From positions 2,431,270 to 2,470,704 of the forward strand of contig NC_068994.1 of assembly GCF_001194135.2 (NCBI RefSeq): DNA of 39,435 bases. The letters are read 5' to 3'. The translations under genes were made by a program, and so were the position numbers. The notes below the pieces were generated by a model. That model ran no database searches, was not told the origin of the DNA, and saw only the letters and a program-made list of their open reading frames with translations. How positions within the stretch are numbered: the stretch's first letter is position 1; each line of letters starts with the position of its first letter. This stretch comes from Octopus bimaculoides. Its lineage: Eukaryota. Positions 3,676 through 39,435 of this stretch are shown here, in pieces.

Positions 3676-3903
3676 TCATTTCACCTGGCTTGCTAACGAT
3701 TCTGCTAGCTTGCCACCNNNNNNNNNNNNNNNNNNNNNNNNNNNNNNNNNNNNNNNNNNNNNNNNNNNNNNNNNNNNNNNNNNNNNNNNNNNNNNNNNNN
3801 NNNNNNNNNNNNNNNNNGATTCTGCTAGCTTGCCACCCTAGACAGATGAAATACCACTAAGCATTTCCCCTGGGGTGCTAATGTTTCTGCCAGCTCGCCA
3901 CCT
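3676..3903 (-). mobile_element. Two SINE 5' head fragments around a 100-N gap
   Basis: gctaacgattctgctagcttgccacc and ctaagcatttc...ctgccagctcgccacctta are reverse complements of the head seen at 15439. Confidence 0.7.
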
Positions 3904-4450
3904 TACAAAGGTCTATCATTGACTCCGTGAGGCTCAACACTCAAAAGTAGCTCAGCCACTTTGCCTCCAAAATGAAGTCTAATAATTGACCTGTAAACTC
4001 AGGTGTTAACCCCCACATGATGTAGAAAGTTCTTTCATGTGATTTACAGATTCATAATTCTTCCTTTCTCATTTATCTCAATCAGGAATTGAAAAATTGG
4101 GGATTCATAAATTCAGTCAAACTTTATGGACATATATACAAATATGTATATATATATATGCGTGTGTATCTCTGTTGATATATATATATATGTATTTATA
4201 TACATGCATACACACACACACACATATGTACACACTCATACATACATTATATCAGAAGCAAAATTTGAAGTTTACTTTTAACAATTTCACCAATACCATT
4301 ACTATAAATAATAGATCGTGTTGCTTCATAAATAGATCCTTAAGTATTCCACAGTATACATGAAACGCTACTTCCATGGAGATATTTCCTATTTCTAAGT
4401 AATATCTCTCTTAATTTAGACAAGTACATGAATACATATATATGCATGTA

Positions 4451-5374: not shown

Positions 5375-5585
5375 AACTGGTTTCTGGGTTTCCATGACAT
5401 ATATACCCCCTACCTAATTGGGATGCCAGTCTATTACAGGATTACTCATTTTTGCCAGCTGAGTGGACTGGAGCAATGAGAAATGAAATGTTTTGCTGAA
5501 GAACATGTGCTATTTGGTCCAGGAATTGAAACCACAATCTTACAATCATGAGTTCAACAGCTAACCACTAAGCCACAAGCCTCCA
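5375..5585 (-). mobile_element. tRNA-derived SINE
   Basis: Minus-strand A box TGGCTTAGTGG and B box GGTTTCAATTCC, followed by a body homologous to 5740-5830 (+). Confidence 0.75.
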
Positions 5586-5739
5586 TAAAGCAATGAAAAA
5601 TATGGTAAAAAAAAACGAAAGTAAAATGTATATAAAAAATAAGAAAGTATATGCACTCTCTGGTATCAATGCCTTATGGAAAGATAGTACTTTGCAGAGA
5701 TTTTTGGGCAGCTGGTTGGCATTAGGAAGGGCATCCACA

Positions 5740-5950
5740 ATCATGAGGTAGTGAGTGCGATTTACGGACCAGGCTGTGTTGTGTTCTTGAGCAAGACACT
5801 TTATTTCACGTTGTTCCATTTCACTCAGCTGCAGAAATGAGTGTCAACGTCACTGGTGTCATGCATGAGTGACTGCTGGACTTCCATAAACAAACTTGCC
5901 TCGGGGGAGGTGGGGTAAATTTCTAGGTGCAAACCCATAGTCATTCATGA
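5740..5950 (+). mobile_element. tRNA-derived SINE, head-to-head with the previous copy
   Basis: cttgagcaagacactttatttcacgttgttcc..tcactcagctg is the reverse complement of the 5455-5510 body. Confidence 0.65.
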
Positions 5951-6663
5951 CCAAAGGGGCTCCTATCCTTCACATACTGAAACTGAATTGTAGTTTGTCT
6001 GAAAATCGGAAATTAATTACCATCGCCTCAGTTAATATAAGAACAAGTGTTCACATAATCATATTGTAGCCGAAGGGAGGCAACTCATATTGTCCTAAGT
6101 TTTTGCTACATTAACGTAGATGAAACAAATAATATCCACATGTGTATATAAACAAAATGTACGTTCTATGTCTTGCACATAAATTTATGTTTTGGTTTAG
6201 TCTCAACAGCTGGATGACCATCTCATCACCAACATTTTTTCAGAATGTACTAAGAGCATTTTACCATGGCATAGGCACTAGAGCAGTGACCAAGTCCTGG
6301 ATAAGACTAAAGAGTCCTCTGAACTCCATATCGTCTCCACTATGTTCACTGACCACTTAACAATGTCCGCTGGATGGATTTTATAATGGTACCAACACCA
6401 GTGGAGTCGCTTTGGAACCCATACGAATAAAGTGTCCTGACTATTTTATGGTGTGTTTGTTCACTCAAGGCTATATGACTGAGAAAGTAAATAGATAAAA
6501 GAGTGATGATGGTAGAAGAAGCAGAATGGGTAGTTGAAGGGAGAAAATGTATGATGTTAGAAATGGGATGAAAGGGTGACAGGGTGAGAGAGAAAGTGAA
6601 GGATAGAAATAGAGATGGATAAATGATGAGAGTAAATGACAGATGCCAGTAACAAGTGGCTCA

Positions 6664-6727
6664 AGAATGAGGGAATGATGACTGGAATTATAGAATGAGG
6701 GAATGATGACTGGAATTATAGAATGAG
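6664..6727. repeat. Perfect 28-bp tandem duplication agaatgagggaatgatgactggaattat (2.3 copies)
   Basis: Read directly at 6664, 6692 and 6720. Confidence 0.9.
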
Positions 6728-6997
6728 AATGCTGAGTGCAGGAATTGCAAGTAGATCTCATTCAATCCCTTATAACGTAGGAGAGTTAGAGTAATAAGAA
6801 TGAGAGATGGAAAGCATCAGAAACATAAGTAATGCTAGACTCATAAAATGATATCCCAATCGCAGGGTTTTATTATTGAGGTTTTTGGCTGCAGGGTTAA
6901 ATTTCAAAAACATTTGAGGTGATGTTCACAACACAGTTTCACAACATGGATTGGTCAACAAGGCTACACAACATGGATTGGTCAAAGTGATGTAGAT

Positions 6998-7040
6998 GCC
7001 TCTGATGAGAATCCAATATGATTTGAAAATTGACTATGGT
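6998..7040 (+). ncRNA. Degenerate hammerhead ribozyme motif in a retroelement 3' remnant
   Basis: CTGATGA (7002-7008), helix II GAATC/GATTT around CAATAT, GAAA (7025-7028). Helices I and III are decayed. An (ATT)n-like tail follows at about 7090. Confidence 0.5.
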
Positions 7041-7222
7041 TGTTCATCATTTGTTGTAGTGCACCTGAGCACTGTATACAATAAGTTCATAATTATTATT
7101 TTATTATTACATATTAAGCTGACTGATCAATTTTGGGGTTGTTTATGTGAAAATGGTACGGTTCATTCATGATAGCAAACTGATAATTTCACATTTGGAG
7201 TTCAAAGTTAAATGAAGAAAGG

Positions 7223-7321
7223 GTAAGTCACAGAGAGATGAATGACAGAGAAATGAGTAATATAAAGATGAGTGTCAGAAAAATAAGAAATAGAAGGATA
7301 AGCGATAGAGACATAAGTGAT

Positions 7322-7377
<56 letters not shown>

Positions 7378-7547
7378 AAGAGAGAGAGTAAATAAATTAA
7401 ATCCCATTAACTTAAGTAATATCTTCCAATCAATTAAAAATATGGAATTTCTGGAATACTTTGAATGTACTAAATATATTATTGAAGTTTTTGTTATTAT
7501 ATCTATTCTCACAAATGTGCTAACTATCCTTTTATTTTTTTGTCCAG
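7223..7547 (+). other. Predicted 5'UTR intron of gene A (325 nt)
   Basis: Donor AGG|gtaagt, branch-like tgctaac, pyrimidine tract and tccag| ending 56 nt before the ATG. Contains the (GA)n tract. Confidence 0.65.
7321..7388. repeat. (GA)n microsatellite
   Basis: Read directly; source of the ER/SL-repeat ORFs. Confidence 0.95.
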
Positions 7548-7603
7548 TTTGAATATTTGAAGTCATCTCTCCACTGGATACTGTATTAATATCAAGACCA
7601 GAA

Positions 7604-9951
7604 ATGTTATTGTGCCTCTGTATTTTACTAACTTTCTCCCACTGTTCTGCAAGTGAAGATATCACATACCATATTAAAGAAGAGAATAGTCCCTACACCT
7701 ATGTAGGGGACATAGCTACTGACTTACAGAAATCAGACAACTCCTTAAAAAATAAGGATTTAATTACATTTAGTCAACGACAACAGAAGGGAGAACAATT
7801 GTTCAATGTGACGAAAACAGGTAAACTGTACACTGTTCAGACATTGGATGCTGAGTCTGTGTGTAGTTATGAGAAAGAATGTTTTGAAACCATTCAAGTT
7901 GCTGTTAACAAATCCAAGACATTTATGAAGATCTTAAAGATTAAAGTCATAATAGAAGACATCAATGATCACCAACCTGAGTTTCCTAAGAAAGAATTTA
8001 CACTAAAATTTAAGGAAGAAGATCGAGAAGGTATAAAGAAAACTATTCCCAGTGCTATGGATAACGATATAGGAAATAAAAGCAGTTCAATCAAATATAA
8101 ATATCATGGTGATGAACATTTTTCATTATCTGTCTCTAAACAAGCTGACGGATTATCATCATTAGCAATTATTTTAGAAAAGAAATTAGATAGAGAAAAG
8201 AAAGACAGTTACAATATCGAAGTCATTGCTAAAGATGGGGGAACTCCACCAAAACAATCTGTGCTAAAGTTTAAAATATCTGTAGAAGATGAAAATGATA
8301 ATGAACCAAAATTTTCCCAAAGTATCTACAATGTCTCTATAGAACATAAGCATAAAAAGAATATTCCAGTAGTCACATTATCTGCCAGTGATTTAGATAT
8401 TGGCAGGAATGGTAAAATATCATATTACTTTAGTCCGAGAACTGATATGAAGATAAGGAGACATTTTAATTTAGATGAAAAAACTGGAAAAATATACTTA
8501 AACTCTACATTACTTGAAGAGAAATTTTTTGAATTTTATGTTGTGGCTAAAGATAATGGAAGTTCTCCTCTCAATTCCATAGCTACTGTTATGGTAAATG
8601 TCATCAACCAACTGAACAATCCTCCAAATATTGATGTGAACTTTATTTCTACACAGAATCACAACACAGCTACCATTCTGGAAGATATCAAAGTTGGTAG
8701 TTTCATTGCTGATGTGATGGTCACTGACAATGATGTTGGACACAATGGACAGGTGAACTGTCATATCAAAGACGACACATTCAAACTACAATCAATGGGA
8801 TCAAAGGAATATAAAATAGTTCTAAAGAAAGCAGTAGACAGAGAGACACAGGAACATTATCACTTTACTGTGTCGTGTGAAGATAAAGGATTACCTGCTC
8901 TGAAAACTGATAAAGATCTGTCAATCCAAGTGCTAGATGTGAATGATGTAGAACNNNNNNNNNNNNNNNNNNNNNNNNNNNNNNNNNNNNNNNNNNNNNN
9001 NNNNNNNNNNNNNNNNNNNNNNNNNNNNNNNNNNNNNNNNNNNNNNNNNNNNNNNNNNNNNNNNNNNNNNNNNNNNNNNNNNNNNNNNNNNNNNNNNNNN
9101 NNNNNNNNNNNNNNNNNNNNNNNNNNNNNNNNNNNNNNNNNNNNNNNNNNNNNNNNNNNNNNNNNNNNNNNNNNNNNNNNNNNNNNNNNNNNNNNNNNNN
9201 NNNNNNNNNNNNNNNNNNNNNNNNNNNNNNNNNNNNNNNNNNNNNNNNNNNNNNNNNNNNNNNNNNNNNNNNNNNNNNNNNNNNNNNNNNNNNNNNNNNN
9301 NNNCTGAATAACACAGTGAATGTTGAAGTGGAAGTATTGGATAGAAATGATAATGCTCCATATTTTACATTTCCTAGTGTTGACCATTTCACTCTTAATG
9401 TCCACTATCATCCGCAAAGTAAGAACGACATCACAGTTCTGAAAGCATCTGATATAGACAGTCACATGAATGCTTTTCTCAGGTATGAAATCGTTTCAGG
9501 TAACGAGAGACAGTTATTTAAACTGGACTCGCTCACTGGTGTGTTATCTTACTCTCGCACAGTTTACCAAAATGATGCCGGATCATATGAGCTTGAGTTT
9601 GTTGTGAAAGACAGTGGTACCCCAGTTCTGTCAGCAACAACTAGCCTATTGTTGAAGCTAACTATTGACAAAAAAACATATCCAATGAGCCTTACATTAA
9701 TAATTATAATTGCTGTAGCATGTGTAGTTGTATCTTTGGTTATCATAGTTTCTATTACAATATGCATCTTTAAACATATTGAAGTCAAGCAGAGTTCGAG
9801 TGCCATACCAATGCTTTCTATAACAGAAATGAATGACCTCTATAATCGAACAGATTCCCAGTCAGTATCACAAATTGACAATATCTATTGGGAATTAATA
9901 CCAGAAATGTACAAAAATAAACTGTCAACATCTTGTAGTTTCTCAACAGTA
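7604..9951 (+). CDS. Pcdh: Protocadherin A, large coding exon (signal peptide, EC1-EC6, TM, proximal tail); N-gap 8955-9303 covers most of EC5
   Basis: Signal peptide MLLCLCILLTFSHCSA. Cadherin motifs DINDHQPEF, LDRE, DENDNEPKF, DVNDVE, DRNDNAPYF. EC1 Cys-X5-Cys (CSYEKEC). TM LTLIIIIAVACVVVSLVIIVSITICIF. The frame resumes at 9304 after the gap (gap length is an estimate, so frames differ). Phase-0 donor GTA|gtaagt at 9952. Symbol is family-level only. Confidence 0.95.
8955..9303. other. Assembly gap (349 N) inside gene A
   Basis: N run; flanking frames differ, so the size is approximate. Confidence 1.
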
Positions 9952-10584
9952 GTAAGTATTCCAATATTTTACAATTATCTGCTCATACAAGTACTTTTAA
10001 AATTTGAAGTTAAATTTCGTTATTTAGATACACTGATAATAAAACTTAAAATTCTCTCTGACATTCCATGATAGTACTTTATCTCATCATATTATTGATT
10101 CAGTGAACACTCACTTCCATTTTACACATTAAAACCAGACGTTCACTTATAGCTTCCAAATTTATAAGATCCACTACCACATTTCTTGAATTAGAATATC
10201 ACATATTCATATATTCTGTTTGTATGAGTCAGTAATAAATTAGCTTTGTCAATTCTAGGCTCACTATCCACAGCACTATCCTTAATCACTTTCAGATAGC
10301 TAAATGGGTAATGGAGAAAATTTGAACCCTCCACATCTCAAAATCTGCATTATAAAAGGCTCACCTGATTTTGCACTGCAACAGTAAAAGCAATGTCAAC
10401 AGCCCACAGCACTTAGAGAATCACTCAGAAAGAGATACTCATTTCCGAGTGAAAATGTCTTTGTTTGACACCACCTTGTAAGCTCTCACCATGTCAAATA
10501 AAGCATGCGCTGTTTGAGGAGCCATAAAGAGGGAAAGAAGCATAGGTAAGTAAGAAGTAGTGTTAAAGAATTTCAGAAAGCATT

Positions 10585-11000
10585 GAGCTTTTGGAGATTG
10601 CAGTGTCCTGACACCTAACAACCAATGCAGCTAATTTATTTCATGCTTTGATAATTCTAGACACGTAAAAATGCTTCAAAAAGTGGGTTCCAGACTGGAG
10701 ATGCAAACTGTAAATGTGGACATACCATAACTAAATTTAGCTATAAATAGAGAGCTGCTGAGTTGCTGACAAAGGTCTTACTCAGTAATATTAGAGATTT
10801 TTAACCTTTTAGAAATATGGTTTGTTCAACATAAATCATTGTTGACAATAATGCCTAGGTTATGTTCATCAGCAGTCATCTTATGGAAGGAGTAGATAAA
10901 TTTCAGATTTTTTCCTCCCAATATGTATAGAGATGCGTTTGTATACTGCCAGTCACTCACCAACTCATTTCAGTCATTGGTTCATAAATGTGCTGTTTCT
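10585..11000 (-). mobile_element. CR1/L2-type LINE RT C-terminal remnant in intron 1 of gene A
   Basis: Minus-strand translations NLGIIVNNDLC*TNHISKR, VCPHLQFASPVWNP and SRIIKA*NKL match the CR1 motifs DLG, RPHLEY..PVW.P and R....WN.LP. Confidence 0.75.
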
Positions 11001-11231
11001 TCATCCTACACCTTTTGCCTCTGCAACAACCTTTACTCCTCTGAAGTTGAGTAAGGATTGTTGTTGAGATAACTCGTTTTAACAAAATATATACATTACT
11101 TTATAAATCATTGTACATAACTAGCTTTTATATTAACATTTAGTGTATTACACGTAGAAGAAATGATAAATGTATTTTGTTTGTTATTTAATGCAGTTTG
11201 ATGTACAGAATCAAATATTTTATTTGAACAG

Positions 11232-11376
11232 TCAAGACCTTTTCCTCTGCGCTCTGAAGAAAGTAATGCTGCTGCTACATATCCACAATATCTGAACCAA
11301 ACATTAGGTTACTATCATAGCATAGAATCATTGAGAAAAGAGGCCAACCACTATGAAGAATTGCGAGAAACATTAG
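11232..11376 (+). CDS. Pcdh: Protocadherin A cytoplasmic exon 2 (SRPFPLRSEESNAAATYPQYLNQTLGYYHSIESLRKEANHYEELRETL-G)
   Basis: Phase-0 acceptor tttgaacag|, 48 open codons, phase-1 donor TTAG|gtattg. Phases (0 in, 1 out), size (145 vs 154 nt) and the YEE(L/I) position near the 3' end match exon 2 of gene B. The 5' boundary is ambiguous (competing AG at 11195-11196). Confidence 0.65.
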
Positions 11377-12190
11377 GTATTGTTATTCATTGAAGTATAA
11401 TACATTATTTTTCAAACTATCAGCCTCATCTTTACTCTGCATATCCACATCATCTACCTTTGCACTACCTTTTATGCATTTAAACACTCACTCACAACCA
11501 GATGCCCCACTTCTGAATAAGTGCATATACTTCATGGATAAAGGAATTACTAATGTCTAGTTAGAAATAAAGATTCCCAGTACATATTCAGGAATAATAT
11601 GCCCAGCAATAAGAGATTGAAATTTTGTAATGTACTACAAGTGTAAATATTAAAAGATATACACTCTAAAGATGAGGCTATGATCTTTAAAAAAAAAAAT
11701 CATCTTAACAATAACTTGTATCATAACTTTAGGTATTTAATGAATATTTTTGTTAACAATTACTGAGGGAAGTGAGGAAAAGACTTATGTACAGAATGGA
11801 GGGATTTATAATTATTGCACTGATAATTTCATTTTCTTAAAAATATGTTTCATTAGTTAGATTATATTATTTGATTTGATTTTAAAATAAACTAGAAATA
11901 TAGATGCTGTGTGAAACAAAATATGAAATAAGTGCAGAATAAATATGCAAGTCAATAGTAAATGCAGTAAGATGAACTTCTTGATTTTACTAAGATACAA
12001 AAAAAACATGAAACTTTTTAAAGTATTTCCTAATGATGTATTCATTTGTTAAGAATAATTTCTCATAAAGGAATAAGGCAGATATTTATAAGGAAGCAGT
12101 ATAAAAAATTAAATACATAATATGTCCAGGAGAATGTTTCATTTAAACTTGAAACAATATTTCTAGAAATTGCACTTTTCTCTCTTTTAG

Positions 12191-12264
12191 ACTTGAACAT
12201 CTGTGAAACACCTTCATTAATAAATGCTGACAAGGACAAAGAAACATGTGAAAGACCAGAGTAG
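12191..12264 (+). CDS. Pcdh: Protocadherin A candidate terminal exon 3 (DLNICETPSLINADKDKETCERPE*)
   Basis: Strong acceptor ttgcacttttctctcttttag|, open in the required phase 1. ATGTGAAAGA-CCAGAGTAGCAG resembles ATGTGAAACCTCCAGAGAGACAG in exon 3 of gene B. AATAAA downstream at 12786. Confidence 0.55.
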
Positions 12265-13859
12265 CAGAAATGGAATGCACTAATTTCAAAAAGAATCCTT
12301 TTTCCATTGAAACATTGTTCCTGACATAAATCCTTGGCACCAGATATTTTGGAATTTTAAATGATACATATTCATTAAAATCTATAAGAAAAAACTGTTT
12401 AAACACACACAATTTTGAAGCATAAATTCTCTTACTTTGGTTTCTAAAATTACAGAACTAAAACAACTACACAGCATCTTAACTTCCTTGGCCTAGCAAG
12501 AAAATTATAGTCATTTGGAAATATTTTGTAACATTTTAATGAGATTTTATATGAATATTGCATTTCTATTTTGATATTTCAAAAATGAGCATAAGAAAAA
12601 AGACTTTTTCTTATATAATGGTTACATATTAAATATTGAGTTCATAATTTGTCTCAAAGTCCCAAATTTAGGGTAAGGGACACTTATTTTATTGACATCC
12701 GAAGGAAGAAAGATCAAATTGACATTAATATGGTTTAAACTTTCAGGCACAAAACATATTCCTCCCTAGACTTTTAGACACCAACAATAAACTTTGCAAT
12801 GTGTCTGTCCTTGAATGACTTCCCAAATGCAAAGTCTTCAGGGATCCCTTTTCTACTGTAGTGACTTAGAACTGAAACTCTCATTTTCTGCTGTCTGGTC
12901 AGTACCATGTGCAGACCACACTCATGTCATGTGGTGTGTTTTGATTATCAACTAATTGGTTTGCAGCGATACCATGCCATATCATGAACATCATCTACAA
13001 TGTCTTTGAAGTGCCCACACTTTTTAGTGTATTAAGATGAAAGCCTACCTAAGGCCAGCAGCAGAGTGTAGTATTTTTTTTTCTTTGTGTGTTGTCCTGT
13101 AAGACAATAGATGGAAGCAACGTTGTTTTTTTTTTTTTCTGTTTTTCAAGCCATGTGGAGTCAGGCGAAAAGAGAAATCACTGTTCACTCGTTTGTTCTT
13201 TTCTCGGCCTCAATTGGTGTTGAAAAACAAAAACACGTGGGTGAGAAAAATAAGCGACGGCTCGTGTCATAGTAGTTGATGGTTCAATATTCTGTACAGT
13301 GGTGATAGATCTTGCCTGACAATTAACAGTACATTGTTTCCTTGGTTCCCTGTTGAGTTGTGGGCTGTAGACAGGGTGATCCTCTCTCTCTCTCTCAATA
13401 TATTTTTATTCTCTGCGTTGAGGTCCTGGCTGGTCTTATAAGAAAAAAAACTGAGATATTAAAGGAATTACAGAAACGCATGTACGCATGCACACACACA
13501 CACACACACACACATGTATGCGCGTGAGCACATTAACCCACACACGCACATTTACGCGCGCGCACAAACACACACACACTGACGATTCAGACTCGTTAAT
13601 AAAGGCTTTTCATCTCATGCTTCATATTTTACAAGAATAATTTCTGAAAAAGAAAAAAATCCTTTTTCAGAATTTCAGTTGTTTTGAAACTCGTTCCTTT
13701 TCTCTCCCCAGATTTTCGAACCCCGACGCCCGTCCGACACCAACCAGCTCGGTCCGTTTCTTTGGCGCATGCGTCAAAGCCAGTGCATTAACAACCAGCA
13801 GACGACACAAAGAAAATCTTAATATAGCTACTAGACATACTAGAAATAACAGCCAAAAC

Positions 13860-14458: not shown

Positions 14459-14797
14459 TAGGCTTCTCAAAATCAGAAAGGAGAAAGCTGATTCAAAGAC
14501 TACATATCCAATCCATCATTGTAACTATAAAAATCTGTAAAACTTTCCAGAAGTTTATCATTTAAATATAAGTGCACGTCTAGATATGCAAGTGTATGCA
14601 TGAGAATACATACATAAGACAAAACATACAAATTTGCATGCATGCATGCATACATACACACACATACATACATACATACATACCCTGTTGTTGATATTGA
14701 AATTCCAATGAAGGAGACTTGGATCTAGGCTAGAAACCAGCTCTTTCTCTATTGAAAAGAAATCTTGAAATAAAACCGAATAATGACCTCATACATA
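14459..14797 (+). repeat. Interspersed repeat, direct copy 1 (copy 2 at 15687-15998)
   Basis: Colinear similarity over about 320 bp, e.g. ggcttctcaaaa.cagaaaggagaaagct and gaaattccaatgaaggaga. Confidence 0.9.
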
Positions 14798-15686: not shown

Positions 15687-15998
15687 TAGGCTTCTCAAAA
15701 CCAGAAAGGAGAAAGCTAATTCAAAGACTACAGGTTCAATCCATCACTGGAACCGTAAAAATCTGTAAAGCTTTCCAGAAGTTTATCATTTAAATATATA
15801 TATGAGCATGTCTAGATATGCAGCTATATGCATGAGAAGACGTACATAAAACAAAACATACAAATTTGCACATATATAAAAAAAATACCCTGTTGTTGAT
15901 GTTGAAATTCCAATGAAGGAGATATGGATCTCAGTTAGAAACTGGCTCTTTCTCTGCTGGCAAGAAATCTTGAAATTAAACTGAACGACGACATACAT
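15687..15998 (+). repeat. Interspersed repeat, direct copy 2
   Basis: Aligns with 14459-14797; differs in the internal microsatellite. Confidence 0.9.
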
Positions 15999-17670
15999 GC
16001 ATGCGTGCAGACGTATGAAAGGATAAATGGATGGCTCGAGGGAGAGATAGGCAGTTAAATATGCACATTCAAAAAATGTTTAAATCATCTCTTTAAATTA
16101 TATTTCCTAGATAATTTAAGTTTCTCTAAAGATATTTAATACATATTTGGTTGTCGTGTTTCAAGAAGACTCATGATCACATAAGAAATGGATAAATGAC
16201 AAAAGTACAAGAACTATTCAATCACTATTACAGAAAAGGGTAAAATTCCTCACCGAAATGATATTTAGTTACAGCTCATTACAGTGAGTTCAAATCTCGC
16301 GAAGGTTAATTTTTCTTTCCATTGTTCTGTAGTCGCTTAGATAAAGTACCAGTGAAGTATCGCGATTGATTTAATCAACTTTCTTTCCCCCATTACACAA
16401 AAAATATGGATTTGTGCTAATATTGGCAATCAATTGCAGAAGTTAAATTGAAAGAACAATTAGTGATTTCTAAGAATTGCAATGTCATTTGTATCGATGC
16501 TTCCAAGTAGATGTAATATTTACTTTTATACAAGAGAGCAAATGTTCTAAACCTGCTTCCTTCTTGTCATTCTTGACCACCTTTTATCATTCTACGCTTG
16601 CCTTGCAAGTGCCCTACAAACAGTTAACCCAAATATCCCTCCTATTACACACATCTCTTCGACATCTCGTCCATGCCCTAATATTTTTTATCTTTTAGTC
16701 ATTGAAAGTATCTTTTGGAATGGGAAGCAGTGCTCATCGGCCATAAGAGATTCTTCAAGACGAGTTGAAGGGAGGAAGGAAAGTATCCTCCAACTGAATG
16801 TTCTCCTTCTACATTTGACCGATCCATTTAAAAAAAGGAAAACGATTGCCATCTACGCATAGTCTAATAACAGTCGGTTCTAGAGTAATGAAAGTTTCAG
16901 AGTTAATTCCCTTGCATCATTTTAAGCTATTTTGAATTAGAGTGACGTCCCTTCGTCTAGCTAGGCTAAGATGATTTTAGAGTGATTTCCCTTATTAAAT
17001 CATATTAATTCAAATTAGACCCACTTTTCAATAGTGTGCCGACCAATATGTCTCTACACAAGTAGTTCGACATGCTAGACATATCAGCAAAATTCCTCTA
17101 CCAGTTTTAAAAAGGTAAGACACACCAGAATAACGTAGTCTAAAATATTTTTAGATGGGTTGGTCATAGGTGTAAACGTTTGGATCACTGGTTAACTCAT
17201 AATCTGCAATTGATTTTAATTTTTCTTGCATTAAAAAAATAGTTCTACTTCTGTAAATGGATAAAAGTAATTCAGGTAATTACACACACACACACACACA
17301 AATACATATCAAAGGCATTTTGGATCAATGTTAAACCTCTGCCACCCTGCTTTTGTTTTAGGTAGAGGCGGTCGACATCACTGTTAATGTGGAAATTATT
17401 TGTGCTTGTTAGTATTTTCCAAGTTTTCTTATCAATGGCTTAGACTTTATCAAGCATCCAATGTATGTATGTATGCATATATTCATGTGTGTATGTGTGT
17501 GTAGAATGTTTTTAACATAATGTGCCCATAAAGCGATTTTTTCTTAGACAAATACTGGTGCTTCTGGCTTTTCAATGAAACAAATATGATAAATATGTCA
17601 TATAGATAAATATTTCACTGAAGAGCAGCTTCCATTTCATAATTCGAATATACATACATACATATATACA

Positions 17671-17671
<1 letters not shown>

Positions 17672-17733
<62 letters not shown>

Positions 17734-17743
17734 NNNNNNNNNN

Positions 17744-17788
<45 letters not shown>
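17672..17788. repeat. Long (AT)n microsatellite with a 10-N gap; AT/CA low complexity continues to about 18270
   Basis: Read directly; source of the YI-repeat ORFs. Confidence 0.95.
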
Positions 17789-17795
<7 letters not shown>

Positions 17796-18429
17796 CATAC
17801 ACAGATGCACACACTCACATGCATGCACACACAAACACCTATTTATGGAACTGGGAGATATTACCTTGTTTTGAAACAAGTGAAATTTGTGACAGTAGGG
17901 CATCAAGCCATAGGAAAATTTACCTCAATATATTCCATCTGACCCATGCAAGCATGTAAAAGTGAACGTTAAAGTGGTGTTGATGATATGTATAAATATG
18001 CATATTTATAGTTGTATATACCCGCAAGTGTTGGTATGTGTGTGCGTGCATATATATATATATATGTATATAAATATATATATATATATACATACATATA
18101 TACACATATACATATATATGTATATCTATTTATCTCTCTCTCTCTATCTATACATACATAAATACATGCATACATACATACATTATCATACATTATCATA
18201 CATACATACATATGAACAGAAGATAACATACATACACACATGCACCTAACTACTTGCTCAAATATACACACACAGAAATTCATTGAAATGATATCTTCAA
18301 GTCTTCATAAAATATGTTTATACACTTACTTGGTCTTTTAGAGAATATCAAAGCATTTATATAAAATTTAACAAAATTTGATTCTATCACAAACTTCAAT
18401 TTAATGTAAAATAGAAGCTATAGAATTGT

Positions 18430-22021: not shown

Positions 22022-22875
22022 TCATTTTGTGTTTGGTGCATTCTGCTGCATACACCAAATGGGAATCCTTACAGATCCTTCCTGTGAAAATCATAACATT
22101 TCTGTTATAATTTTTGATGGAATTAGTCTGACTCATGTTATTGCACAACAAACAGAGTTTACCTCTCTTATGGGAGTTTTTTGGGATGCAGTGTCCAGAA
22201 ACTCCAATGGAGTTTTTATTAGAGGTACTGGTTAATATTTCTATTACATCTAAAGTCTACAATAGGTGGAAGAGGAAATATTTGTTGGAAATATTTTCTG
22301 AAATATGTTGGTACTGTCATGTAACACTTTTGAAATGCCAGCGAAACTTCGGTGCTAGTTAATCACTAAAGGAATTCAGCCATAAGCTCTTTTCTGACTG
22401 CTCAAACTAGACATGAAAGTTTGATTATCACTACTAATTTCAGCTATGTCATTTGCGATTTCCTTTAATCTTGATTCACTATAACTGCACTTTACATAAC
22501 GGTGCACAAAACTACTTGCATGTTTCCAATAATCCCCAATGTCTGTGCAAATACATCTTATTCTCAAAAACTGGGACTTTCGATTTGATCTGATTGTATG
22601 ATGTGGATGATAAGATCAGTGGTAGAAATAAATATGGGATGACATAGGTTTGTAAAATTGTGCCTATTTGGCCTTCCGTAAACTTGACTTTTGTGTCCAA
22701 AATTTCGATGCTAGTTTTTGAAAAGCTCAACTTGAATTTTATTTTGGACTTAAATCCATAGTCTTCTGCGAAGCAGTCACAGAAATGTAAAAATTTGACT
22801 AAACTATCCTGTGTTCCTTTCCAGACAAAAAAGATGTTGTCATTGAACTGTAACCAGAGTATAGGTTACCCAACT
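22021..22875 (-). mobile_element. Penelope-like element remnant (RT C-half, linker, start of GIY-YIG)
   Basis: Minus strand: LWLQFNDNIFFVWKGTQDSLVKF (eroded W.RYIDDIF..W), KIKFKLSFSKTSIEILDTKV, RIRCICTD, LCLLC, CKDSHLVYAAECTKHKM (GIY-YIG N-terminus), truncated at the AAT repeat. Confidence 0.85.
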
Positions 22876-28406: not shown

Positions 28407-30822
28407 ATGACATTACTAATTGTGATGGTAATAATATCTTTCCTCCCGTCTGCGGCATGTATAGACATTACAGTTCGTTTAAAAGAAGAAAATAGTCCCA
28501 AAAGCTATGTGGGGGACATCACTGCTAACTCCCAAAAATGGCTCCTGGACAAAGAAGATCTCAGTCAGATTACATTTAATCAACTCCAACAAAAGGAGAC
28601 AAAATTATTCAATGTCACCCTGTCCGGGAAACTGTACACCGTTAGGACAGTGGATGCTGAGTCACTATGTAGATATAATACAGAATGTTATAAAACCGTG
28701 AAAGTTGCTGTTCACAAAGGAAAAAACTTCTTGAAAATCTTAAAAATTAAAGTAATTATAGAAGACATCAATGACCACCAACCTGAGTTTCCAGACAAAG
28801 AAATAACTTTGCACTTTGGAGAAGGAGATGGTAAAGGGATGAAAAAATCCATTCCAAATGCCATTGACAAAGATGTTGGAGTTTTAAATAGTGTAATTAA
28901 TTATCATTTAAAGAACAATGAGGAAATGTTTTCTTTGTTAGTTTCTAAAAGAGCTGATGGAATATCTCGACTAGAGATTGTCCTAGAAAGTAAATTAAAT
29001 AGAGAAGTGAAAGACATGTACAGTGTACAAGTTGAGGCTGAAGATGGAGGTTCCCCTTCTAAAAAGAGTGTATTAGATGTGAAAATATTAGTAGAAGATG
29101 AAAATGATAACTTACCAGTATTCTCTCAGAATATTTATAATGTTACTATAAAAAGTTATTTTCAAAATGATATACCTGTTGTCACTTTGTCAGCTACAGA
29201 TTCCGATATTGGCAATAATGGGAAAATAAATTATTATTTTAGTCCAAAAACGTCAGATCTTGATAGCAAATATTTTAGACTCGTTAAGAAAACTGGTGAG
29301 ATATTCTTGATTGATAAAATTGATGCTATCATTGACAATGAAGTTTATACATTGTACGTTGAAGCCAGAGATGGTGGCAACCCTCCTCTCAGTTCCATAG
29401 CCACTGTTATGGTAAATGTCATCAACCAGCAGAACAATCCTCCAAATATTGATGTGAACTTTATTTCTACACAGAATCACAACACAGCTACCATTCTGGA
29501 AGATATCAAAGTTGGTAGTTTCATTGCTTATGTGATGGTCACTGACAATGATGTTGGACACAATGGACAGGTGAACTGTCATATCAAAGACGACACATTC
29601 AAACTACAGTCAATGGGATCAAAGGAATATAAAATAGTTCTAAAGAAAGCAGTAGACAGAGAGACACAGGAACATTATCACTTTACTGTGTCGTGTGNNN
29701 NNNNNNNNNNNNNNNNNNNNNNNNNNNNNNNNNNNNNNNNNNNNNNNNNNNNNNNNNNNNNNNNNNNNNNNNNNNNNNNNNNNNNNNNNNNNNNNNNNNN
29801 NNNNNNNNNNNNNNNNNNNNNNNNNNNNNNNNNNNNNNNNNNNNNNNNNNNNNNNNNNNNNNNNNNNNNNNNNNNNNNNNNNNNNNNNNNNNNNNNNNNN
29901 NNNNNNNNNNNNNNNNNNNNNNNNNNNNNNNNNNNNNNNNNNNNNNNNNNNNNNNNNNNNNNNNNNNNNNNNNNNNNNNNNNNNNNNNNNNNNNNNNNNN
30001 NNNNNNNNNNNNNNNNNNNNNNNNNNNNNNNNNNNNNNNNNNNNNNNNNNNNNNNNNNNNNNNNNNNNNNNNNNNNNNNNNNNNNNNNNNNNNNNNNNNN
30101 NNNNNNNNNNNNNNNNNNNNNNNNNNNNNNNNNNNNNNNNNNNNNNNNNNNNNNNNNNNNNNNNNNNNNNNNNNNNNNNNNNNNNNNNNNNNNNNNNNNN
30201 NNNNNNNNNNNNNNNNNNNNNNNNNNNNNNNNNNNNNNNNNNNNNNNNNNNNNNNNNNNNNNNNNNNNNNNNNNNNNNNNNNNNNNNNNNNNNNNNNNNN
30301 NNNNNNNNNNNNNNNNNNNNNNNNNNNNNNNNNNNNNNNNNNNNNNNNNNNNNNNNNNNNNNNNNNNNNNNNNNNNNNNNNNNNNNNNNNNNNNNNNNNN
30401 NNNNNNNNNNNNNNNNNNNNNNNNNNNNNNNNNNNNNNNNNNNNNNNNNNNNNNNNNNGACGTCACCAATGTTCACAGCTGTGCACCTACCAAGTGATAA
30501 CACCATAGATGCCACATTGTTGATTATCATTGTAGTAGCAGCTGTGATAGTATCTATAGCTATTGTGGTTTCTATAACACTGTGTATTGTGAGATGTAAC
30601 AATGTGAGAAATAGCTCATCTGAAAGAACAGCAGAAGAGAAACAGGCATACCAATGTCGCAATGAGATGAGACAGTTGATCTATCAAGGTAACAACAGTG
30701 TACCTGTGATGTCAGGTAATCGAGGAGAGACATCAGACAGATATGGTCATTCGAGGAGCCATTACTATCCAGAAGATTGGAAGACATCGACAATGAACAG
30801 AAGTCTTCAGAAGTCTACAAAG
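28407..30822 (+). CDS. Pcdh: Protocadherin B, large coding exon; N-gap 29698-30458 covers the end of EC4, EC5 and EC6
   Basis: Signal peptide MTLLIVMVIISFLPSAA. CRYNTEC Cys-X5-Cys, DINDHQPEF, LNRE, DENDNLPVF. After the gap: TSPMFTAVHLPSDNTID, then TM ATLLIIIVVAAVIVSIAIVVSITLCIV. Phase-0 donor AAG|gtaagc at 30823. Confidence 0.95.
29698..30458. other. Assembly gap (761 N) inside gene B
   Basis: N run. Confidence 1.
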
Positions 30823-31506
30823 GTAAGCTTTACTTTAATTAACAATCTGTTAGTAAAGAATGTGTAATTAAGAATGATCTAGCTCAGTGCTTTATATTTG
30901 ACATTACGTTTCACTTGACCAATTTTACAGTATTGTTTTGCTTCATAATGTCCAAAATATATCTTATGTATCGTTAAGAAAATACCATTCCTGATATGGT
31001 GTGGAATACTTATTTATTTAATTTTTGTTTTGTGATTACTGCTGTCCGTTTGTTGTAAGATATTTTATGGCAGATGAATGTCTGAAAAGACATTTACCAG
31101 GATAATAAGAGATCTGTTTATACATTACAGTCTGGCATCTTTAATTTTTGTCAATAGTATTGCATCTGATTTTGTGGAATCATTTATAAAAGTATTGTTA
31201 ACAATTGTTTCTGACTTTAACTAACTTATACTGTATATAATTATTGAAGGAAACGAGGAAACATAATGAGGTAAATTCTGAAGGTTTTATTGTTTTGTCA
31301 GTGGAGAAATGTCAGTACTTGTGCCTTTTCCTACTGAAAGATTAAAAAATCTTAACAACAGGCTTAAAAAATTTGACTGATCAGAAATATAGAAAAAATT
31401 TTTTTATTACCACCAAAAACCTGTAAATTTTATTATTATTACATATTTTAGTGTCAATCATAAATGTTATGTTTAGGGTATGTCTTATTACTATTATATT
31501 TTACAG

Positions 31507-31660
31507 CAGAAATACAGTCAACCCATTGAGGTGACATCTTATGGAGACAACAGACCATCTTCTAACTATCCCACTGACACATTGACCAGTCGTAAGAGTA
31601 GTGGACAGTGCTGGAGTGAGCGGTCAAGTAGACAGTATGAAGAAATACCAGCAATGTCAG
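31507..31660 (+). CDS. Pcdh: Protocadherin B cytoplasmic exon 2 (QKYSQPIEVTSYGDNRPSSNYPTDTLTSRKSSGQCWSERSSRQYEEIPAMS-G)
   Basis: Acceptor ctattatattttacag| in phase 0, 51 open codons of Ser/Arg/Tyr-rich tail-like sequence, phase-1 donor CAG|gtaaaa. Confidence 0.85.
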
Positions 31661-31959
31661 GTAAAACAATCTCATTTATTCATATTTGTTATTAATTCTA
31701 TTCATAGTATTTACTTTAGAGATTAATCAACTCTAAATCTGTAATTTACTAATGCTTTAAGCAACACAAATCATCTTTATGACATGTTAAATGTTGCTTT
31801 TGTTATGTAGTCTTATCCACTATAGTTTCTACTTCTGTAAAAGACCTAGAAATATCTGGAGATTGGCTATATTAATATACAGTCAAAAGTGGCAATATTT
31901 TAGGGTTAACACTTGTGTGCTGAGGGTGCTGCTGTTCTCTATCTCCCAATGCAGGAATC

Positions 31960-32310: not shown

Positions 32311-33530
32311 ATCTGCTGTGTCCCTTCCTGCTGACCACGGCTACGTAGTCTCTATTGGAAGATAAGGAACAAGAGGATAGTGGCAGGAGTGACGGGGTGA
32401 TAAGAGGAAGTAAGAGAGGTGAAGGTGAAGGTCGAGTGAACTGGGTATAAATGGTTCAATTGGTCTTCGTTTACATTGGCTAAAAGATAAACCAAAAGTG
32501 TCAAATGATCAGAGTGGTGTCAAAGGAAATGGAAAACAGGTGGGTTCTGTGAATGGCACAAAGGAGTGTTTGGGGCAGAGTCAGAATAGGTGCAGTGATG
32601 TCTGTAGTTACAGTGGAAGCCATGTACAGCAAAGTGAAGGAATATACTGCTCTCCTCACTCACATTGAGAAGAGGAGTGAATGGTTGAAAGATGAGCCAT
32701 AGGCATGGGTGAAAGAGTGCAACGTATGGTGAAAAGAAGGTGAACAATAAAAGCATAGAGGGGAGAGTGCAATATGTGATGAACAGAAGAGGTGTACTGC
32801 TATCCTCAATCACACTGAGTGCATAGTATAGTAAGATTGGGAGATTGAGAAGAAGAGGAAGTGATTAAGAGATGAGCATTAGGGGCATGATGCAGGAAGC
32901 TAGAGACATAGAAGCAAGGGTGAAAGAGATATGGGTGACAGCAGACTGATGAGTTACAGAGAAGTGTAATGCAAGGGATGAGCATTTGAGTGACAAAGAG
33001 AGTGAGTAATATGGGATGAGAGACTATCAAAGAGACTTATCAGTAAGCAGACACAAATACACCTAGCATTGTTTTAGTGTGTTTTGCCATGCCTAGATAA
33101 GAAAGCAGATCTTCTCTCACACTGTGTGTAAACTAGTCACTGCAGGCCTTTGTCATCGTCTCTGTGGTGTGTAATAGATTCTGATCTGTCTTCACCATTT
33201 CACCTTTCTTGTATCTCTGTCTCTCTCATCCACAGGTTCCATTTCCTTTGGGAAAACATGCACATTTAGTTGTTCATCTTAATAAATATGTAATTGTAAT
33301 GTGGTTTCTAGTGTCTTTGCAACAAATGGAGCAGAACTGTATTAGGAAATGATATGGTGTGCATTTAATTGAAATCAGCTTCTTAGATAAGGACACTTAA
33401 AACTTGATTTTTATTTTATATTATAGCCCTGTCATTGTAGCAGACTAGGAATTGATTACTAATATCAGTAAATACCTATTTATTATGTAAACTATGTGAT
33501 GAATGTAGCTGATATATGTGTGTGTTTCAG

Positions 33531-33652
33531 GAATCTATGGTGGTGCCCCACCTGATGTATCAAGCACCATTGAGAGAGACCATTACCAAGACAGATATGT
33601 GAAACCTCCAGAGAGACAGTTACCTTCAACACCAGATGTTGTTGTCAGTTAA
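33531..33652 (+). CDS. Pcdh: Protocadherin B terminal exon 3 (GIYGGAPPDVSSTIERDHYQDRYVKPPERQLPSTPDVVVS*)
   Basis: Acceptor tgtgtgtttcag|, open in phase 1 for 39 full codons to TAA 33650-33652. GC-richer than its flanks. AATAAA at 33741. Confidence 0.8.
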
Positions 33653-38599: not shown

Positions 38600-39435
38600 A
38601 TGTTGCTATTTCTAGTTGTGTTACTGACTTTTTCTCATTGTTATTCAAGTGAAGATATCACATACCATGTTAAAGAAGAGAATAGTCCCTATACTTATGT
38701 AGGGGACATTGCTACTGACTTACAGAAATCAGATAGCTCCTTTTTAAAGAACAAGGATTTAATTACATTTAGTCAACTCCAACAAAAGGGAGAACAGTTG
38801 TTCAATGTGACGAAAACAGGGAAACTGTACACTGTTCAGACATTGGATGCTGAGTCTGTGTGTAGTTATGAGAAAGAATGTTTTGAAATCGTTAAAGTTG
38901 CTGTTCACAAATCCAAGACATTTATGAAGATCTTAAAGATTAAAGTCATAATAGAAGACATAAATGATCACCAACCTGAGTTTCCTGAGAAAGAAATTAA
39001 TATACAATTTGAAGAAGAATATGGGAAAGGAAAAAAAAATCCTGTACCTAATGCTATTGACAAAGATATAGGTTATCAAAACAGTTTAATTAAATATGAG
39101 TTACATGGTGATAAAGCACTATTTTCATTATCTGTCTCTAAACAAGCTGATGGATTATCAACCTTAAGAATCATTTTAGAAGATAAATTAGACAGAGAAA
39201 AAAAAGACGACTACAATATCGAAGTCATTGCTAAAGATGGGGGAACTCCACCAAAGGAGTCTGTTTTAAATGTTAAAATATCTGTAAAAGATGAAAATGA
39301 TAATGCACCACAATTTTCTCAAAGTATCTACAACGTCTCAATTGAACATAAACACAAAAAGAATATTCCAGTAGTCACATTATCTGCCAGTGACTTAGAT
39401 ATTGGTAGGAATAGTAAAATATCTTTCTATTTTAG
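38600..39435 (+). CDS. Pcdh: Protocadherin C, 5' part (signal peptide, EC1, EC2, start of EC3); runs off the window end
   Basis: Not in the ORF track because no stop falls inside the window. Manual translation MLLFLVVLLTFSHCYSSEDITYHVKEENSPYTYVGD...DINDHQPEF...LDRE...DENDNAPQF...DLDIGRNSKISFYF is uninterrupted and is a close paralog of gene A. Confidence 0.95.
   Translation, partial: MLLFLVVLLTFSHCYSSEDITYHVKEENSPYTYVGDIATDLQKSDSSFLKNKDLITFSQLQQKGEQLFNVTKTGKLYTVQTLDAESVCSYEKECFEIVKVAVHKSKTFMKILKIKVIIEDINDHQPEFPEKEINIQFEEEYGKGKKNPVPNAIDKDIGYQNSLIKYELHGDKALFSLSVSKQADGLSTLRIILEDKLDREKKDDYNIEVIAKDGGTPPKESVLNVKISVKDENDNAPQFSQSIYNVSIEHKHKKNIPVVTLSASDLDIGRNSKISFYF

What the first reader, a model, noticed from the sequence alone, without database searches (positions are those of the whole stretch)
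8614..8879. EC4 is 264/266 identical between genes A and B, which are divergent elsewhere
Seen: 8614-8879 matches 29432-29697 at all but two positions, 8711 G/29529 T (Asp vs Tyr) and 8791 A/29609 G (silent). Identity rises abruptly at the end of EC3, while EC1-EC3 and the tails of A and B are clearly diverged. In EC1-EC3, A is instead closest to C, so A is a mosaic. Established: gene conversion homogenises individual EC domains in vertebrate clustered protocadherins. Inference: recent domain-restricted conversion is acting here, or the assembler reused paralog reads.
Basis: partly seen in the sequence, partly recalled or inferred. Interest (0 to 1): 0.7.

Follow-up and report, generated by a model that had tools for sequence, protein, structure and literature searches.

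The report
Octopus protocadherins share a homogenised EC4–EC6 block
Two neighbouring octopus protocadherin genes really are almost identical in their fourth cadherin repeat, but this is the visible edge of a roughly 1-kb EC4–EC6 block kept alike across a whole gene subfamily by gene conversion, and assembly gaps hide the rest of it.

Summary
8614-8879 matches 29432-29697 at 264/266 positions, with exactly the two mismatches reported. The chance probability is about 2e-42 given 33% A-B divergence upstream. The window is Octopus bimaculoides chromosome CM046614.1, a short-read assembly.

The "EC4-restricted" extent is an assembly artefact. Copy B runs into a 761-N gap at 29698, and A runs into a 349-N gap 75 nt later. 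All 7 O. bimaculoides paralogues examined break 139-414 nt after the same EC3/EC4 boundary. Gapless long-read loci of O. sinensis and O. vulgaris, including the syntenic orthologue of A, show the high-identity block runs from EC4 through EC6. In A this is 8565 to 9644.

The identity is also not specific to A and B. At least 11 gene copies in three species share the block at 96-99.6%. B equals the family consensus, and A differs from it by two private substitutions.

Synonymous divergence between A and B is 0.02-0.05 in the tract and 1.1 in EC1-3. The orthologue value is 0.11. Gene conversion (concerted evolution) is therefore well supported.

This is a known kind of process in vertebrate clustered protocadherins, and it has been suggested in general terms for octopus. 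Interest is moderate to low.

The parts
7604..8564 (+). Gene A (RefSeq model XP_052828953.1 = P0133): signal peptide and EC1-EC3, the diversified part.
   Evidence: ORF and Pfam Cadherin_2 + Cadherin. 67% nt identity to B and 87% to C. A-B dS = 1.11. P0133 matches A exactly.
8565..8954 (+). Gene A: 5' part of the homogenised block (last strand of EC3 plus EC4). The finding's tract 8614-8879 lies inside it. 8565-8656 is a graded boundary zone.
   Evidence: 309/315 identical to B. 95-97.5% identical to 9 other copies in O. bimaculoides and O. sinensis, and 96.4% to O. vulgaris. Polymorphisms shared between species are concentrated in alignment columns 989-1072.
8955..9303 (.). 349-N scaffold gap inside gene A. 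It hides about 262 nt (end of EC4 and most of EC5).
   Evidence: The distance between the flanking matches is 262 nt in the gapless orthologues L002 and L006. The four O. sinensis copies are about 99.5% identical across this stretch.
9304..9644 (+). Gene A: 3' part of the homogenised block (end of EC5 plus EC6).
   Evidence: 98.2-98.8% identical to O. sinensis paralogues L001 and L005. There is a sharp switch at 9645 to states shared only with the orthologues.
9645..9951 (+). Gene A: A-type-specific end of EC6, transmembrane segment and start of the cytoplasmic tail (end of exon 1 is approximate).
   Evidence: A equals its orthologue sA but differs from all B-type copies from 9645 on, including a 36-nt indel. 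About 51% identical to B-type tails and 93% to the orthologue. tblastn with the O. vulgaris tail.
28407..29382 (+). Gene B: signal peptide and EC1-EC3, the diversified part.
   Evidence: 62-70% nt identity to every other copy.
29383..29697 (+). Gene B: the assembled part of the homogenised block (end of EC3 and most of EC4). It equals the family consensus over 29432-29697.
29698..30458 (.). 761-N scaffold gap inside gene B. It hides about 704 nt (end of EC4, EC5, EC6).
   Evidence: The flanks map to L001:11279 and L001:11984.
30459..30864 (+). Gene B: B-type transmembrane and cytoplasmic end of exon 1.
   Evidence: 96-99% identical to four other O. bimaculoides paralogues, 91-95% to O. sinensis copies, and about 51% to A.
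31504..31662 (+). Gene B exon 2 (cytoplasmic). Each gene has its own copy.
   Evidence: tblastn 98%. 95-98% nt identity to paralogues, while the introns do not align.
33524..33649 (+). Gene B exon 3 (C-terminus).
   Evidence: tblastn 98%. 99-100% nt identity to a paralogue in L004.
38600..39435 (+). Gene C (A0A0L8G7L3 = P0135): EC1-EC3 only, cut by the end of the window. It is A's closest relative within the window.

Best explanation
The window holds three tandem, same-strand members of one Octopus bimaculoides protocadherin subfamily. In this subfamily the 5' half of the large coding exon (EC1-EC3) is diversified. A block of about 1.0-1.1 kb encoding EC4, EC5 and EC6 is kept nearly identical in all members by repeated non-reciprocal exchange between paralogues, that is, gene conversion producing concerted evolution. 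In most members the transmembrane and cytoplasmic part is kept alike as well. Purifying selection on the block and selection for diversity upstream act alongside the conversion.

The A-B identity in EC4 is the piece of this block that the short-read assembler could reach from A's and B's unique EC3 sequence. After that point the repeat broke the assembly, which is why the gaps are there.

Shown here:
- the block, its limits, and that it is family-wide and found across species;
- depressed synonymous divergence in the block;
- paralogues closer to each other than orthologues are;
- in A, the block is an internal patch.

Inferred:
- the molecular mechanism is homology-dependent repair between tandem copies. 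It sustains itself because only the block stays similar enough to pair;
- the functional reading, by analogy with vertebrate clustered protocadherins. EC2-EC3 would carry recognition specificity. EC4 (the partner of EC1 in the antiparallel trans dimer) and EC5-EC6 (the cis interface) would need to stay compatible among isoforms expressed together.
For: 1. A-B dS is 1.11 in EC1-3 and 0.047 in 8564-8879 (0.019 in 8615-8879). Protein-level constraint alone cannot produce this.
2. The orthologue dS between A and O. vulgaris is 0.110 in the same tract and 0.129 in the private tail. In-genome paralogues A and B are therefore closer than orthologues. Likewise, in the block core A-B is 99.1% against 97.3% for A and its O. 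sinensis orthologue, and that orthologue is 99.6% identical to an O. sinensis paralogue. There are two species-fixed differences across all sampled copies.
3. Mean pairwise identity over up to 12 copies (55-66 pairs per window) is 0.59-0.84 upstream. It rises to 0.95-1.00 from alignment column ~1000 to ~2000 and then falls again.
4. In A the block is bounded on both sides, at 8565 and at 9644/9645. The A-specific tail is shared with the syntenic orthologues L002 and L006. This indicates an internal conversion patch rather than a single crossover.
5. The 5' boundary is graded and carries polymorphisms shared between species. This is as expected if conversion tracts end at different points.
6. 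Gapless long-read loci (O. sinensis L001, L002, L005; O. vulgaris L006) show each gene carrying its own contiguous copy of the block.
7. Every O. bimaculoides copy keeps private substitutions, 1-4 per 228 nt.
8. Literature. In vertebrates EC4-6 are converted and EC2-3 are spared (PMC4978886, citing Noonan 2004). EC1-4 form the trans interface, EC5-6 the cis interface, and EC2-3 are diversified (PMC7811963). Gene conversion has been suggested in general terms for octopus PCDHs (PMC6339937, PMC9068888).
Against: - Only 2 species-fixed differences were found in about 390 nt, and between-species identity (96-99%) is nearly as high as within-species identity. Much of the similarity is therefore old, and post-speciation conversion is supported by few sites.
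- No pair-specific signal for A-B in a Sawyer-type test.
- Introns between the homogenised exons of B-type genes do not align between paralogues. Conversion tracts would have to be short and limited to the exons and their immediate flanks.
- All O. bimaculoides block sequence lies within ~420 nt of a gap. The long-read assemblies may have been polished with short reads, which can itself homogenise repeats.
- No reads were available for checking.
Confidence: 0.8

Rival explanations
1. Assembly artefact. The near-identity arises because the short-read assembler or gap closer filled the edges of A's and B's gaps with reads from other paralogues (collapse or consensus), and the true EC4 sequences of A and B differ substantially.
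For: Both tracts abut N gaps. 7 of 7 O. bimaculoides paralogues break 139-414 nt into the block, and the assembly re-enters 340-420 nt before unique 3' sequence, which is about the reach of paired-end reads. The assembly has 713,915 contigs (PMC10700109). B's tract is identical to the family consensus.
Against: A and every other copy retain private variants inside the tract. The reading frame is continuous across the boundary. Gapless long-read assemblies of O. sinensis and O. vulgaris show the same block attached to each gene's own EC1-3, including the syntenic orthologues of A. The artefact explains where the tract ends, not why the sequences are alike.
Confidence: 0.06
2. One reading: one recent conversion event between A and B, confined to EC4.
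For: A-B (99.1-99.2%) is nominally the closest pair for A. The Sawyer-type test with mismatches allowed gives p=0.03 before multiple-test correction.
Against: A differs from B at 2 sites and from L003g1 and L004g3 at 3 sites in the core, which is not a distinguishable difference. Both differences are private to A. B is 99.5% identical to three other paralogues. The EC4 limit is an N gap. A's EC6 (9304-9644) is also in the block.
Confidence: 0.04
3. No conversion. EC4-EC6 is identical among paralogues because of extreme constraint at the nucleotide level. For example, RNA structures needed for the heavy A-to-I editing of cephalopod neural transcripts could suppress synonymous change. (The editing idea comes from general knowledge and was not tested here.)
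For: Between-species identity of the block (96-99%) exceeds that of the non-coding flanks (86-93%). Only 2 species-fixed differences were found. The EC6 dS between A and O. vulgaris, outside one patch, is 0.031.
Against: The orthologue dS in the EC4 tract (0.110) is about the same as in the unconstrained tail (0.129) and consistent with flank divergence, so synonymous sites there do change at roughly the neutral rate. Yet paralogues that are saturated upstream (dS 1.1) differ by only dS 0.02-0.05. Fixed species differences shared by all copies would require exchange between copies.
Confidence: 0.05
4. Unequal crossing-over, or recent duplication of 3' gene halves, rather than conversion. Each gene's EC4-to-3'-end would then derive from a recent common segment joined to older 5' halves.
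For: In B-type genes the similarity continues through the transmembrane and cytoplasmic part and exons 2-3, at 96-100% within O. bimaculoides. The array is tandem and on one strand.
Against: In A the block is internal, with an old A-specific 3' end shared with orthologues. Introns and intergenic DNA downstream of the block do not align between paralogues, whereas a crossover would carry them along.
Confidence: 0.05

Closest known systems
Gene conversion in vertebrate clustered protocadherins (Pcdh alpha/beta/gamma; Noonan et al. 2004, as summarised in PMC4978886 and PMC7811963)
   Same: Tandem arrays of large single exons each encoding six EC repeats plus a transmembrane segment. Synonymous divergence is lowest in the membrane-proximal ectodomains (EC4-6, especially EC5/6) and highest in EC2-EC3. 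Paralogue subfamilies are homogenised while the specificity domains stay diverse.
   Different: This is an independent cephalopod expansion, not orthologous to the vertebrate clusters (PMC9068888). Homogenisation here is more complete, at 95-100% over a contiguous ~1 kb that includes all of EC4. There are no shared constant exons: each gene carries its own 3' exons. The block is conserved across species that split about 34 My ago.
General statements of gene conversion in octopus and cephalopod PCDH clusters (Albertin 2015 as cited in PMC6339937; Albertin 2022, PMC9068888)
   Same: [quoted passage not shown]
   Different: Those statements concern whole genes and come from trees. I found no paper in the searchable library that resolves the pattern by domain, defines block boundaries, or links it to the assembly gaps.
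Concerted evolution of partial gene segments in other tandem families (general knowledge; not tested here)
   Same: Conversion tracts bounded by selection for diversity in the ligand- or recognition-determining part and homogeneity elsewhere.
   Different: The families and functions are different. This is only a conceptual parallel.

Membership tests
Protocadherin (cadherin superfamily), clustered-type gene architecture | Six extracellular cadherin repeats plus a transmembrane segment encoded in one large exon. | tested here: met
   The ORFs are continuous apart from the N gaps. Pfam finds Cadherin_2 and Cadherin repeats. The intact O. vulgaris orthologue P0132 (847 aa) has six linker motifs and six Cadherin stretches.
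Protocadherin (cadherin superfamily), clustered-type gene architecture | Tandem array of paralogues in the same orientation. | tested here: met
   A, B and C are all on the + strand within 39 kb. Further paralogues lie about 7-10 kb apart in L001, L003 and L004, and one copy in L004 is inverted.
Vertebrate-style clustered Pcdh (variable exons spliced to shared constant exons) | One shared set of constant exons downstream of the array. | tested here: not met
   A has its own exons 2/3 (~11235-11387, ~12187-12307). B has its own (~31504-31662, ~33524-33649). Other paralogues each have their own copies too. This agrees with PMC9068888.
Concerted evolution by gene conversion | Synonymous divergence in the tract far below that of flanking coding sequence in the same gene pair. 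| tested here: met
   dS is 0.019-0.047 in the tract and 1.11 upstream.
Concerted evolution by gene conversion | Paralogues within a species are more alike than orthologues between species, with species-fixed differences shared by all copies. | tested here: met
   A-B is 99.1% against 97.3% for A and its orthologue. The O. sinensis orthologue is 99.6% identical to an O. sinensis paralogue. dS is 0.02-0.05 against 0.11. There are 2 fixed differences. The margin is small and rests on few sites.
Concerted evolution by gene conversion | The tract is an internal patch with discordant phylogenetic affinity on both sides. | tested here: met
   In A, EC1-3 group with the C-like clade, 8565-9644 is the family consensus, and the sequence from 9645 on is shared only with the orthologues.
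Concerted evolution by gene conversion | A pair-specific fragment that is significant in a Sawyer/GENECONV permutation test on polymorphic sites. | tested here: inconclusive
   For A-B, p=0.40 with no mismatches allowed and p=0.03 with mismatches allowed, uncorrected. The block is nearly monomorphic across the family (12% polymorphic sites against 62% upstream), so the test has little to work with.
Concerted evolution by gene conversion | The sequence identity is verified in the same individual by reads or clones that span the repeat. | not testable with these tools
   No read data or long-read O. bimaculoides assembly is available here. Only cross-species long-read loci could be used.

The most novel reading that the evidence does not exclude
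Octopus protocadherin arrays expanded independently of the vertebrate ones, yet have arrived at the same modular logic: a variable recognition module (EC1-EC3) joined to a 'constant region' (EC4-EC6, and in most genes the transmembrane and cytoplasmic exons). They implement it differently. Every gene carries its own physical copy of the constant region, and DNA-level concerted evolution keeps the copies alike over tens of millions of years, instead of splicing to shared constant exons. The same exchange machinery occasionally swaps short patches within EC2/EC3 and so creates new specificities.
Probability: 0.45. Interest if true: 0.55.

Novelty: new member of a known kind. Interest (0 to 1): 0.35.

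Why it matters
If the domain-resolved pattern holds over the whole subfamily, it gives a convergent second example of how large neuronal recognition families combine diversity in EC2-EC3 with uniformity in the membrane-proximal domains. It also makes a testable prediction for octopus: specificity lies in EC2-EC3, and EC4-EC6 form a shared interaction scaffold.

There is a practical consequence too. Every gene of this subfamily in the current O. bimaculoides reference is broken by a gap at this block. The RefSeq and UniProt models across it are truncated, fused or chimeric. Counts, trees and expression mapping of these PCDHs that use this reference are therefore affected.

Tried and rejected
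- A protein search with the EC4-EC6 block to count carriers returned only three exact carriers. Gene models across the block are fragmented, so no copy-number estimate could be made.
- I searched for donors of the divergent EC2/EC3 patches in the O. sinensis orthologue among all fetched loci. The best match was 75-79%, so the donor is either unsampled or the patches have another cause.
- Pfam scans of four other window ORFs (22515-22865, 31972-32340, 5571-5843, 37094-37432) found no families.
- The first run of the Sawyer-type permutation test timed out. It was re-run on fewer pairs.
- Noonan 2004 and Albertin 2015 are not held in the library. Their content is cited only through papers that quote them.
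- I considered spliced-RNA-templated conversion, because exons are alike and introns are not. I set it aside because identity runs about 15-45 nt past the exon ends.
- I considered that the O. sinensis orthologue is a pseudogene, because it has a 1-nt deletion. The O. vulgaris orthologue is intact, so a long-read indel error is more likely.

Full report
**What is in the window.** The window is AT-rich (about 32% GC) animal DNA with four N runs: 3718-3817, 8955-9303, 17734-17743 and 29698-30458. Three long stop-free frames on the + strand encode protocadherins.
- Gene A: 7604-8954, a gap, then 9304-10068.
- Gene B: 28407-29697, a gap, then 30459-30864.
- Gene C: 38600 to the end of the window, EC1-EC3 only.

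Pfam finds Cadherin_2 plus Cadherin repeats in them. The RefSeq protein XP_052828953.1 of Octopus bimaculoides (P0133) is identical to A, including the Asp encoded at 8711. UniProt A0A0L8G7L3 (P0135) is C. The encoding chromosome is CM046614.1 of GCA_001194135.2. That assembly is a Hi-C scaffolding of short-read contigs. It has 713,915 contigs, against 20,491 for the PacBio-based O. sinensis assembly (PMC10700109).

**The observation.** 8614-8879 and 29432-29697 differ at exactly two positions: 8711 G/T (Asp/Tyr) and 8791 A/G (silent). Upstream, A and B differ at 312 of 956 aligned sites. Two or fewer differences in 266 sites therefore has probability about 2e-42. The switch is abrupt but lies at 8565, in the last strand of EC3, giving 309/315 over 8565-8879.

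**The tract's end is an assembly boundary.** B's sequence stops at 29697 because a 761-N gap begins there. A continues for 75 nt in the same conserved sequence and then enters a 349-N gap.

I fetched five further paralogues from the same O. bimaculoides chromosome (L003, L004). Each one breaks in the same place. Counting from the common EC3/EC4 boundary, the assembled stretch is 390, 315, 414, 277, 299, 139 and 372 nt long in the seven genes. On the far side of the gaps, the assembly resumes 340-420 nt before sequence that is unique to each gene. For A the unique sequence is its private tail, and for B-type genes it is the intron. This pattern fits a repeat longer than the reach of paired-end reads. 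The "EC4-restricted" shape of the finding therefore reflects the sequencing library rather than the biology.

**What the gaps hide.** Gapless long-read loci supply the missing sequence.
- L002 (O. sinensis) and L006 (O. vulgaris) are syntenic orthologues of A. The flanks of L002 match window 5737-13066 at 86-93%.
- L001 and L005 carry further O. sinensis paralogues.
- In these loci the sequence matching A 8565-8954 is followed by 262 nt and then by the match to A 9304 onward.
- B's two gap flanks are 704 nt apart in L001.

In an alignment of up to 12 copies, mean pairwise nucleotide identity is 0.59-0.84 through EC1-EC3. It jumps to 0.95-1.00 at column ~1000 and stays there to column ~2000, the end of EC6. 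The four O. sinensis copies differ at only 3-4 of the 260 positions that A's gap hides.

A's post-gap sequence 9304-9644 is 98.2-98.8% identical to O. sinensis paralogues. At 9645 it switches sharply to states shared only with its own orthologues. The homogeneous unit is therefore EC4+EC5+EC6, about 1.0-1.1 kb. In A it is an internal patch (8565-9644) between a C-like EC1-3 and an A-specific transmembrane and cytoplasmic tail.

**It is not an A-B event.** In the tract, both A/B differences are private to A. All ten other copies from two species carry T and G at those sites. B is 99.5% identical to three other O. bimaculoides paralogues and 98.2-98.6% to the O. sinensis copies. A is 99.1% identical to B and 98.6-98.7% to two other paralogues. 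Each copy departs from the family consensus by 1-5 substitutions in 228 nt.

It gives p=0.40 with no mismatches allowed and p=0.03 with mismatches allowed, uncorrected. The weak result arises because the whole family is nearly monomorphic in the block, with 12% polymorphic sites against 62% upstream.

**Why gene conversion is still the best explanation.**
- A-B synonymous divergence is 1.11 in EC1-3 and 0.019-0.047 in the tract. Constraint on the protein cannot explain a drop at synonymous sites.
- Synonymous sites in the tract are not frozen. Between A and its O. vulgaris orthologue, dS is 0.110 in the tract and 0.129 in the private tail, in line with 7-14% flank divergence.
- Two paralogues that are saturated upstream are thus closer in EC4 than orthologues separated about 34 My ago (date from PMC10700109).
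- The same holds in O. sinensis, where the A orthologue is 99.6% identical to a paralogue but 97.3% to A.
- Two sites are fixed for different bases in all sampled O. bimaculoides copies and all sampled O. sinensis copies. This requires spread between copies after the species split.
- The 5' boundary is graded. Polymorphisms shared between species are concentrated in its first ~90 nt, as expected if conversion tracts end at different points.
- The internal-patch structure in A argues for conversion rather than a single unequal crossover.

**Caveats.** The post-speciation signal rests on few sites. Much of the identity is old, since between-species identity is 96-99%. Introns between the similar exons of B-type genes do not align. 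All O. bimaculoides block sequence lies next to gaps. Short-read polishing of the long-read assemblies could exaggerate their homogeneity.

**How it probably works (inference).** Tandem paralogues pair during repair or recombination only where they are similar enough, which is within the block. Short conversion tracts copy one gene's block onto another, and this keeps the block similar enough for the next event. Tracts that run into EC3 are rarer and are filtered by selection for distinct recognition surfaces.

In vertebrate clustered protocadherins EC1-EC4 form the antiparallel trans dimer, with EC2-EC3 diversified and specificity-determining. EC5-EC6 form the promiscuous cis interface (PMC7811963). 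Conversion there is frequent in EC4-6 and rare in EC2-3 (PMC4978886, citing Noonan 2004). The octopus pattern matches this. EC2 and late EC3 are the most variable parts, EC1 is intermediate, and EC4-6 are uniform. It arose in an independent expansion (PMC9068888) and without shared constant exons. A and B each have their own exons 2 and 3.

**Comparison with what is known, and novelty.** Gene conversion in protocadherin clusters is established for vertebrates. It has been suggested, without domain resolution, for octopus (PMC6339937, PMC9068888). I found no paper in the searchable library that describes the EC4-EC6 block or its coincidence with assembly gaps. I therefore class the finding as a new member of a known kind. 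It is real and explicable, of moderate interest to specialists, and of practical importance for anyone using O. bimaculoides PCDH gene models.

**Verdict.** The artefact alternative explains the shape of the tract but not its existence. Confidence in the family-wide concerted-evolution explanation is 0.8. Interest is 0.35.

Noticed in passing
window 9439-9482 (gene A, EC6); L002 and L006 orthologous positions: [quoted passage not shown] They encode DRDNGNN, a canonical cadherin Ca2+-binding DxDxGxN motif, where A and the family consensus encode DIDSHMN. This looks like a short-patch conversion in one lineage after the ~34-My split. The direction is unknown without an outgroup.
   Followed up: partly
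L002:9277-9435 and 9706-9860 vs L006:10401-10560 and 10831-10985: [quoted passage not shown] Yet they differ by about 20% (down to 57-75% identity in 60-nt windows) in two ~155-nt patches, one in EC2 and one in late EC3. In the EC3 patch O. bimaculoides A agrees with O. vulgaris. This suggests patchwise replacement of specificity-domain sequence in O. sinensis, or an assembly chimera. No donor was found among the fetched loci.
   Followed up: partly
window 28734-29010 (gene B, end of EC1 and EC2) vs L004 gene 1: This 277-nt fragment is 94% identical (261/277) between B and a paralogue that is otherwise about 65-70% identical in EC1-3. The permutation p is about 0.002. It is a pair-specific mosaic piece inside the 'variable' region. 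UniProt A0A0L8FH16 (P0009) also has a B-like EC2.
   Followed up: partly
window 8955-9303 and 29698-30458; L003 and L004 gaps: Public gene models across these gaps are damaged. XP_052828953.1 (gene A) ends in a spurious '...KKAICQSKC'. XP_052828955.1 and A0A0L8G7L3 jump from EC3/EC4 straight to the transmembrane segment. XP_052828958.1 fuses two neighbouring genes.
   Followed up: yes
window ~7533-7545, and the equivalent position in B, C and six other paralogues: A polypyrimidine tract followed by CAG lies about 55-60 nt upstream of every start codon. A-C similarity begins there, at 7534. The large EC exon therefore appears to be preceded by a separate 5'-UTR exon in each gene.
   Followed up: partly
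window 31504-31662 and 33524-33649 (B); ~11235-11387 and ~12187-12307 (A): Each gene has its own small cytoplasmic exons 2 and 3. The B-type exons are 95-100% identical between O. bimaculoides paralogues, while the introns between them do not align. The 'constant' cytoplasmic part is therefore duplicated in every gene, not shared.
   Followed up: partly
L002:~9343 (alignment column 464): A 1-nt deletion breaks the reading frame of the O. sinensis orthologue of A, and its RefSeq models are split into two. The O. vulgaris orthologue is an intact 847-aa ORF. The deletion is probably a long-read indel error rather than a pseudogene.
   Followed up: partly
window 24832-25183 and 26025-26376: An inverted repeat with 352-nt arms, 97% identical and about 840 nt apart, lies in the A-B intergenic region. 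It is likely a transposable element with long terminal inverted repeats or a foldback. There is also a 79% direct repeat at 14459-14780 / 15687-15985, plus several (CA)n-type microsatellites at ~1766-2083, 4058-4360 and 17650-18250.
   Followed up: no
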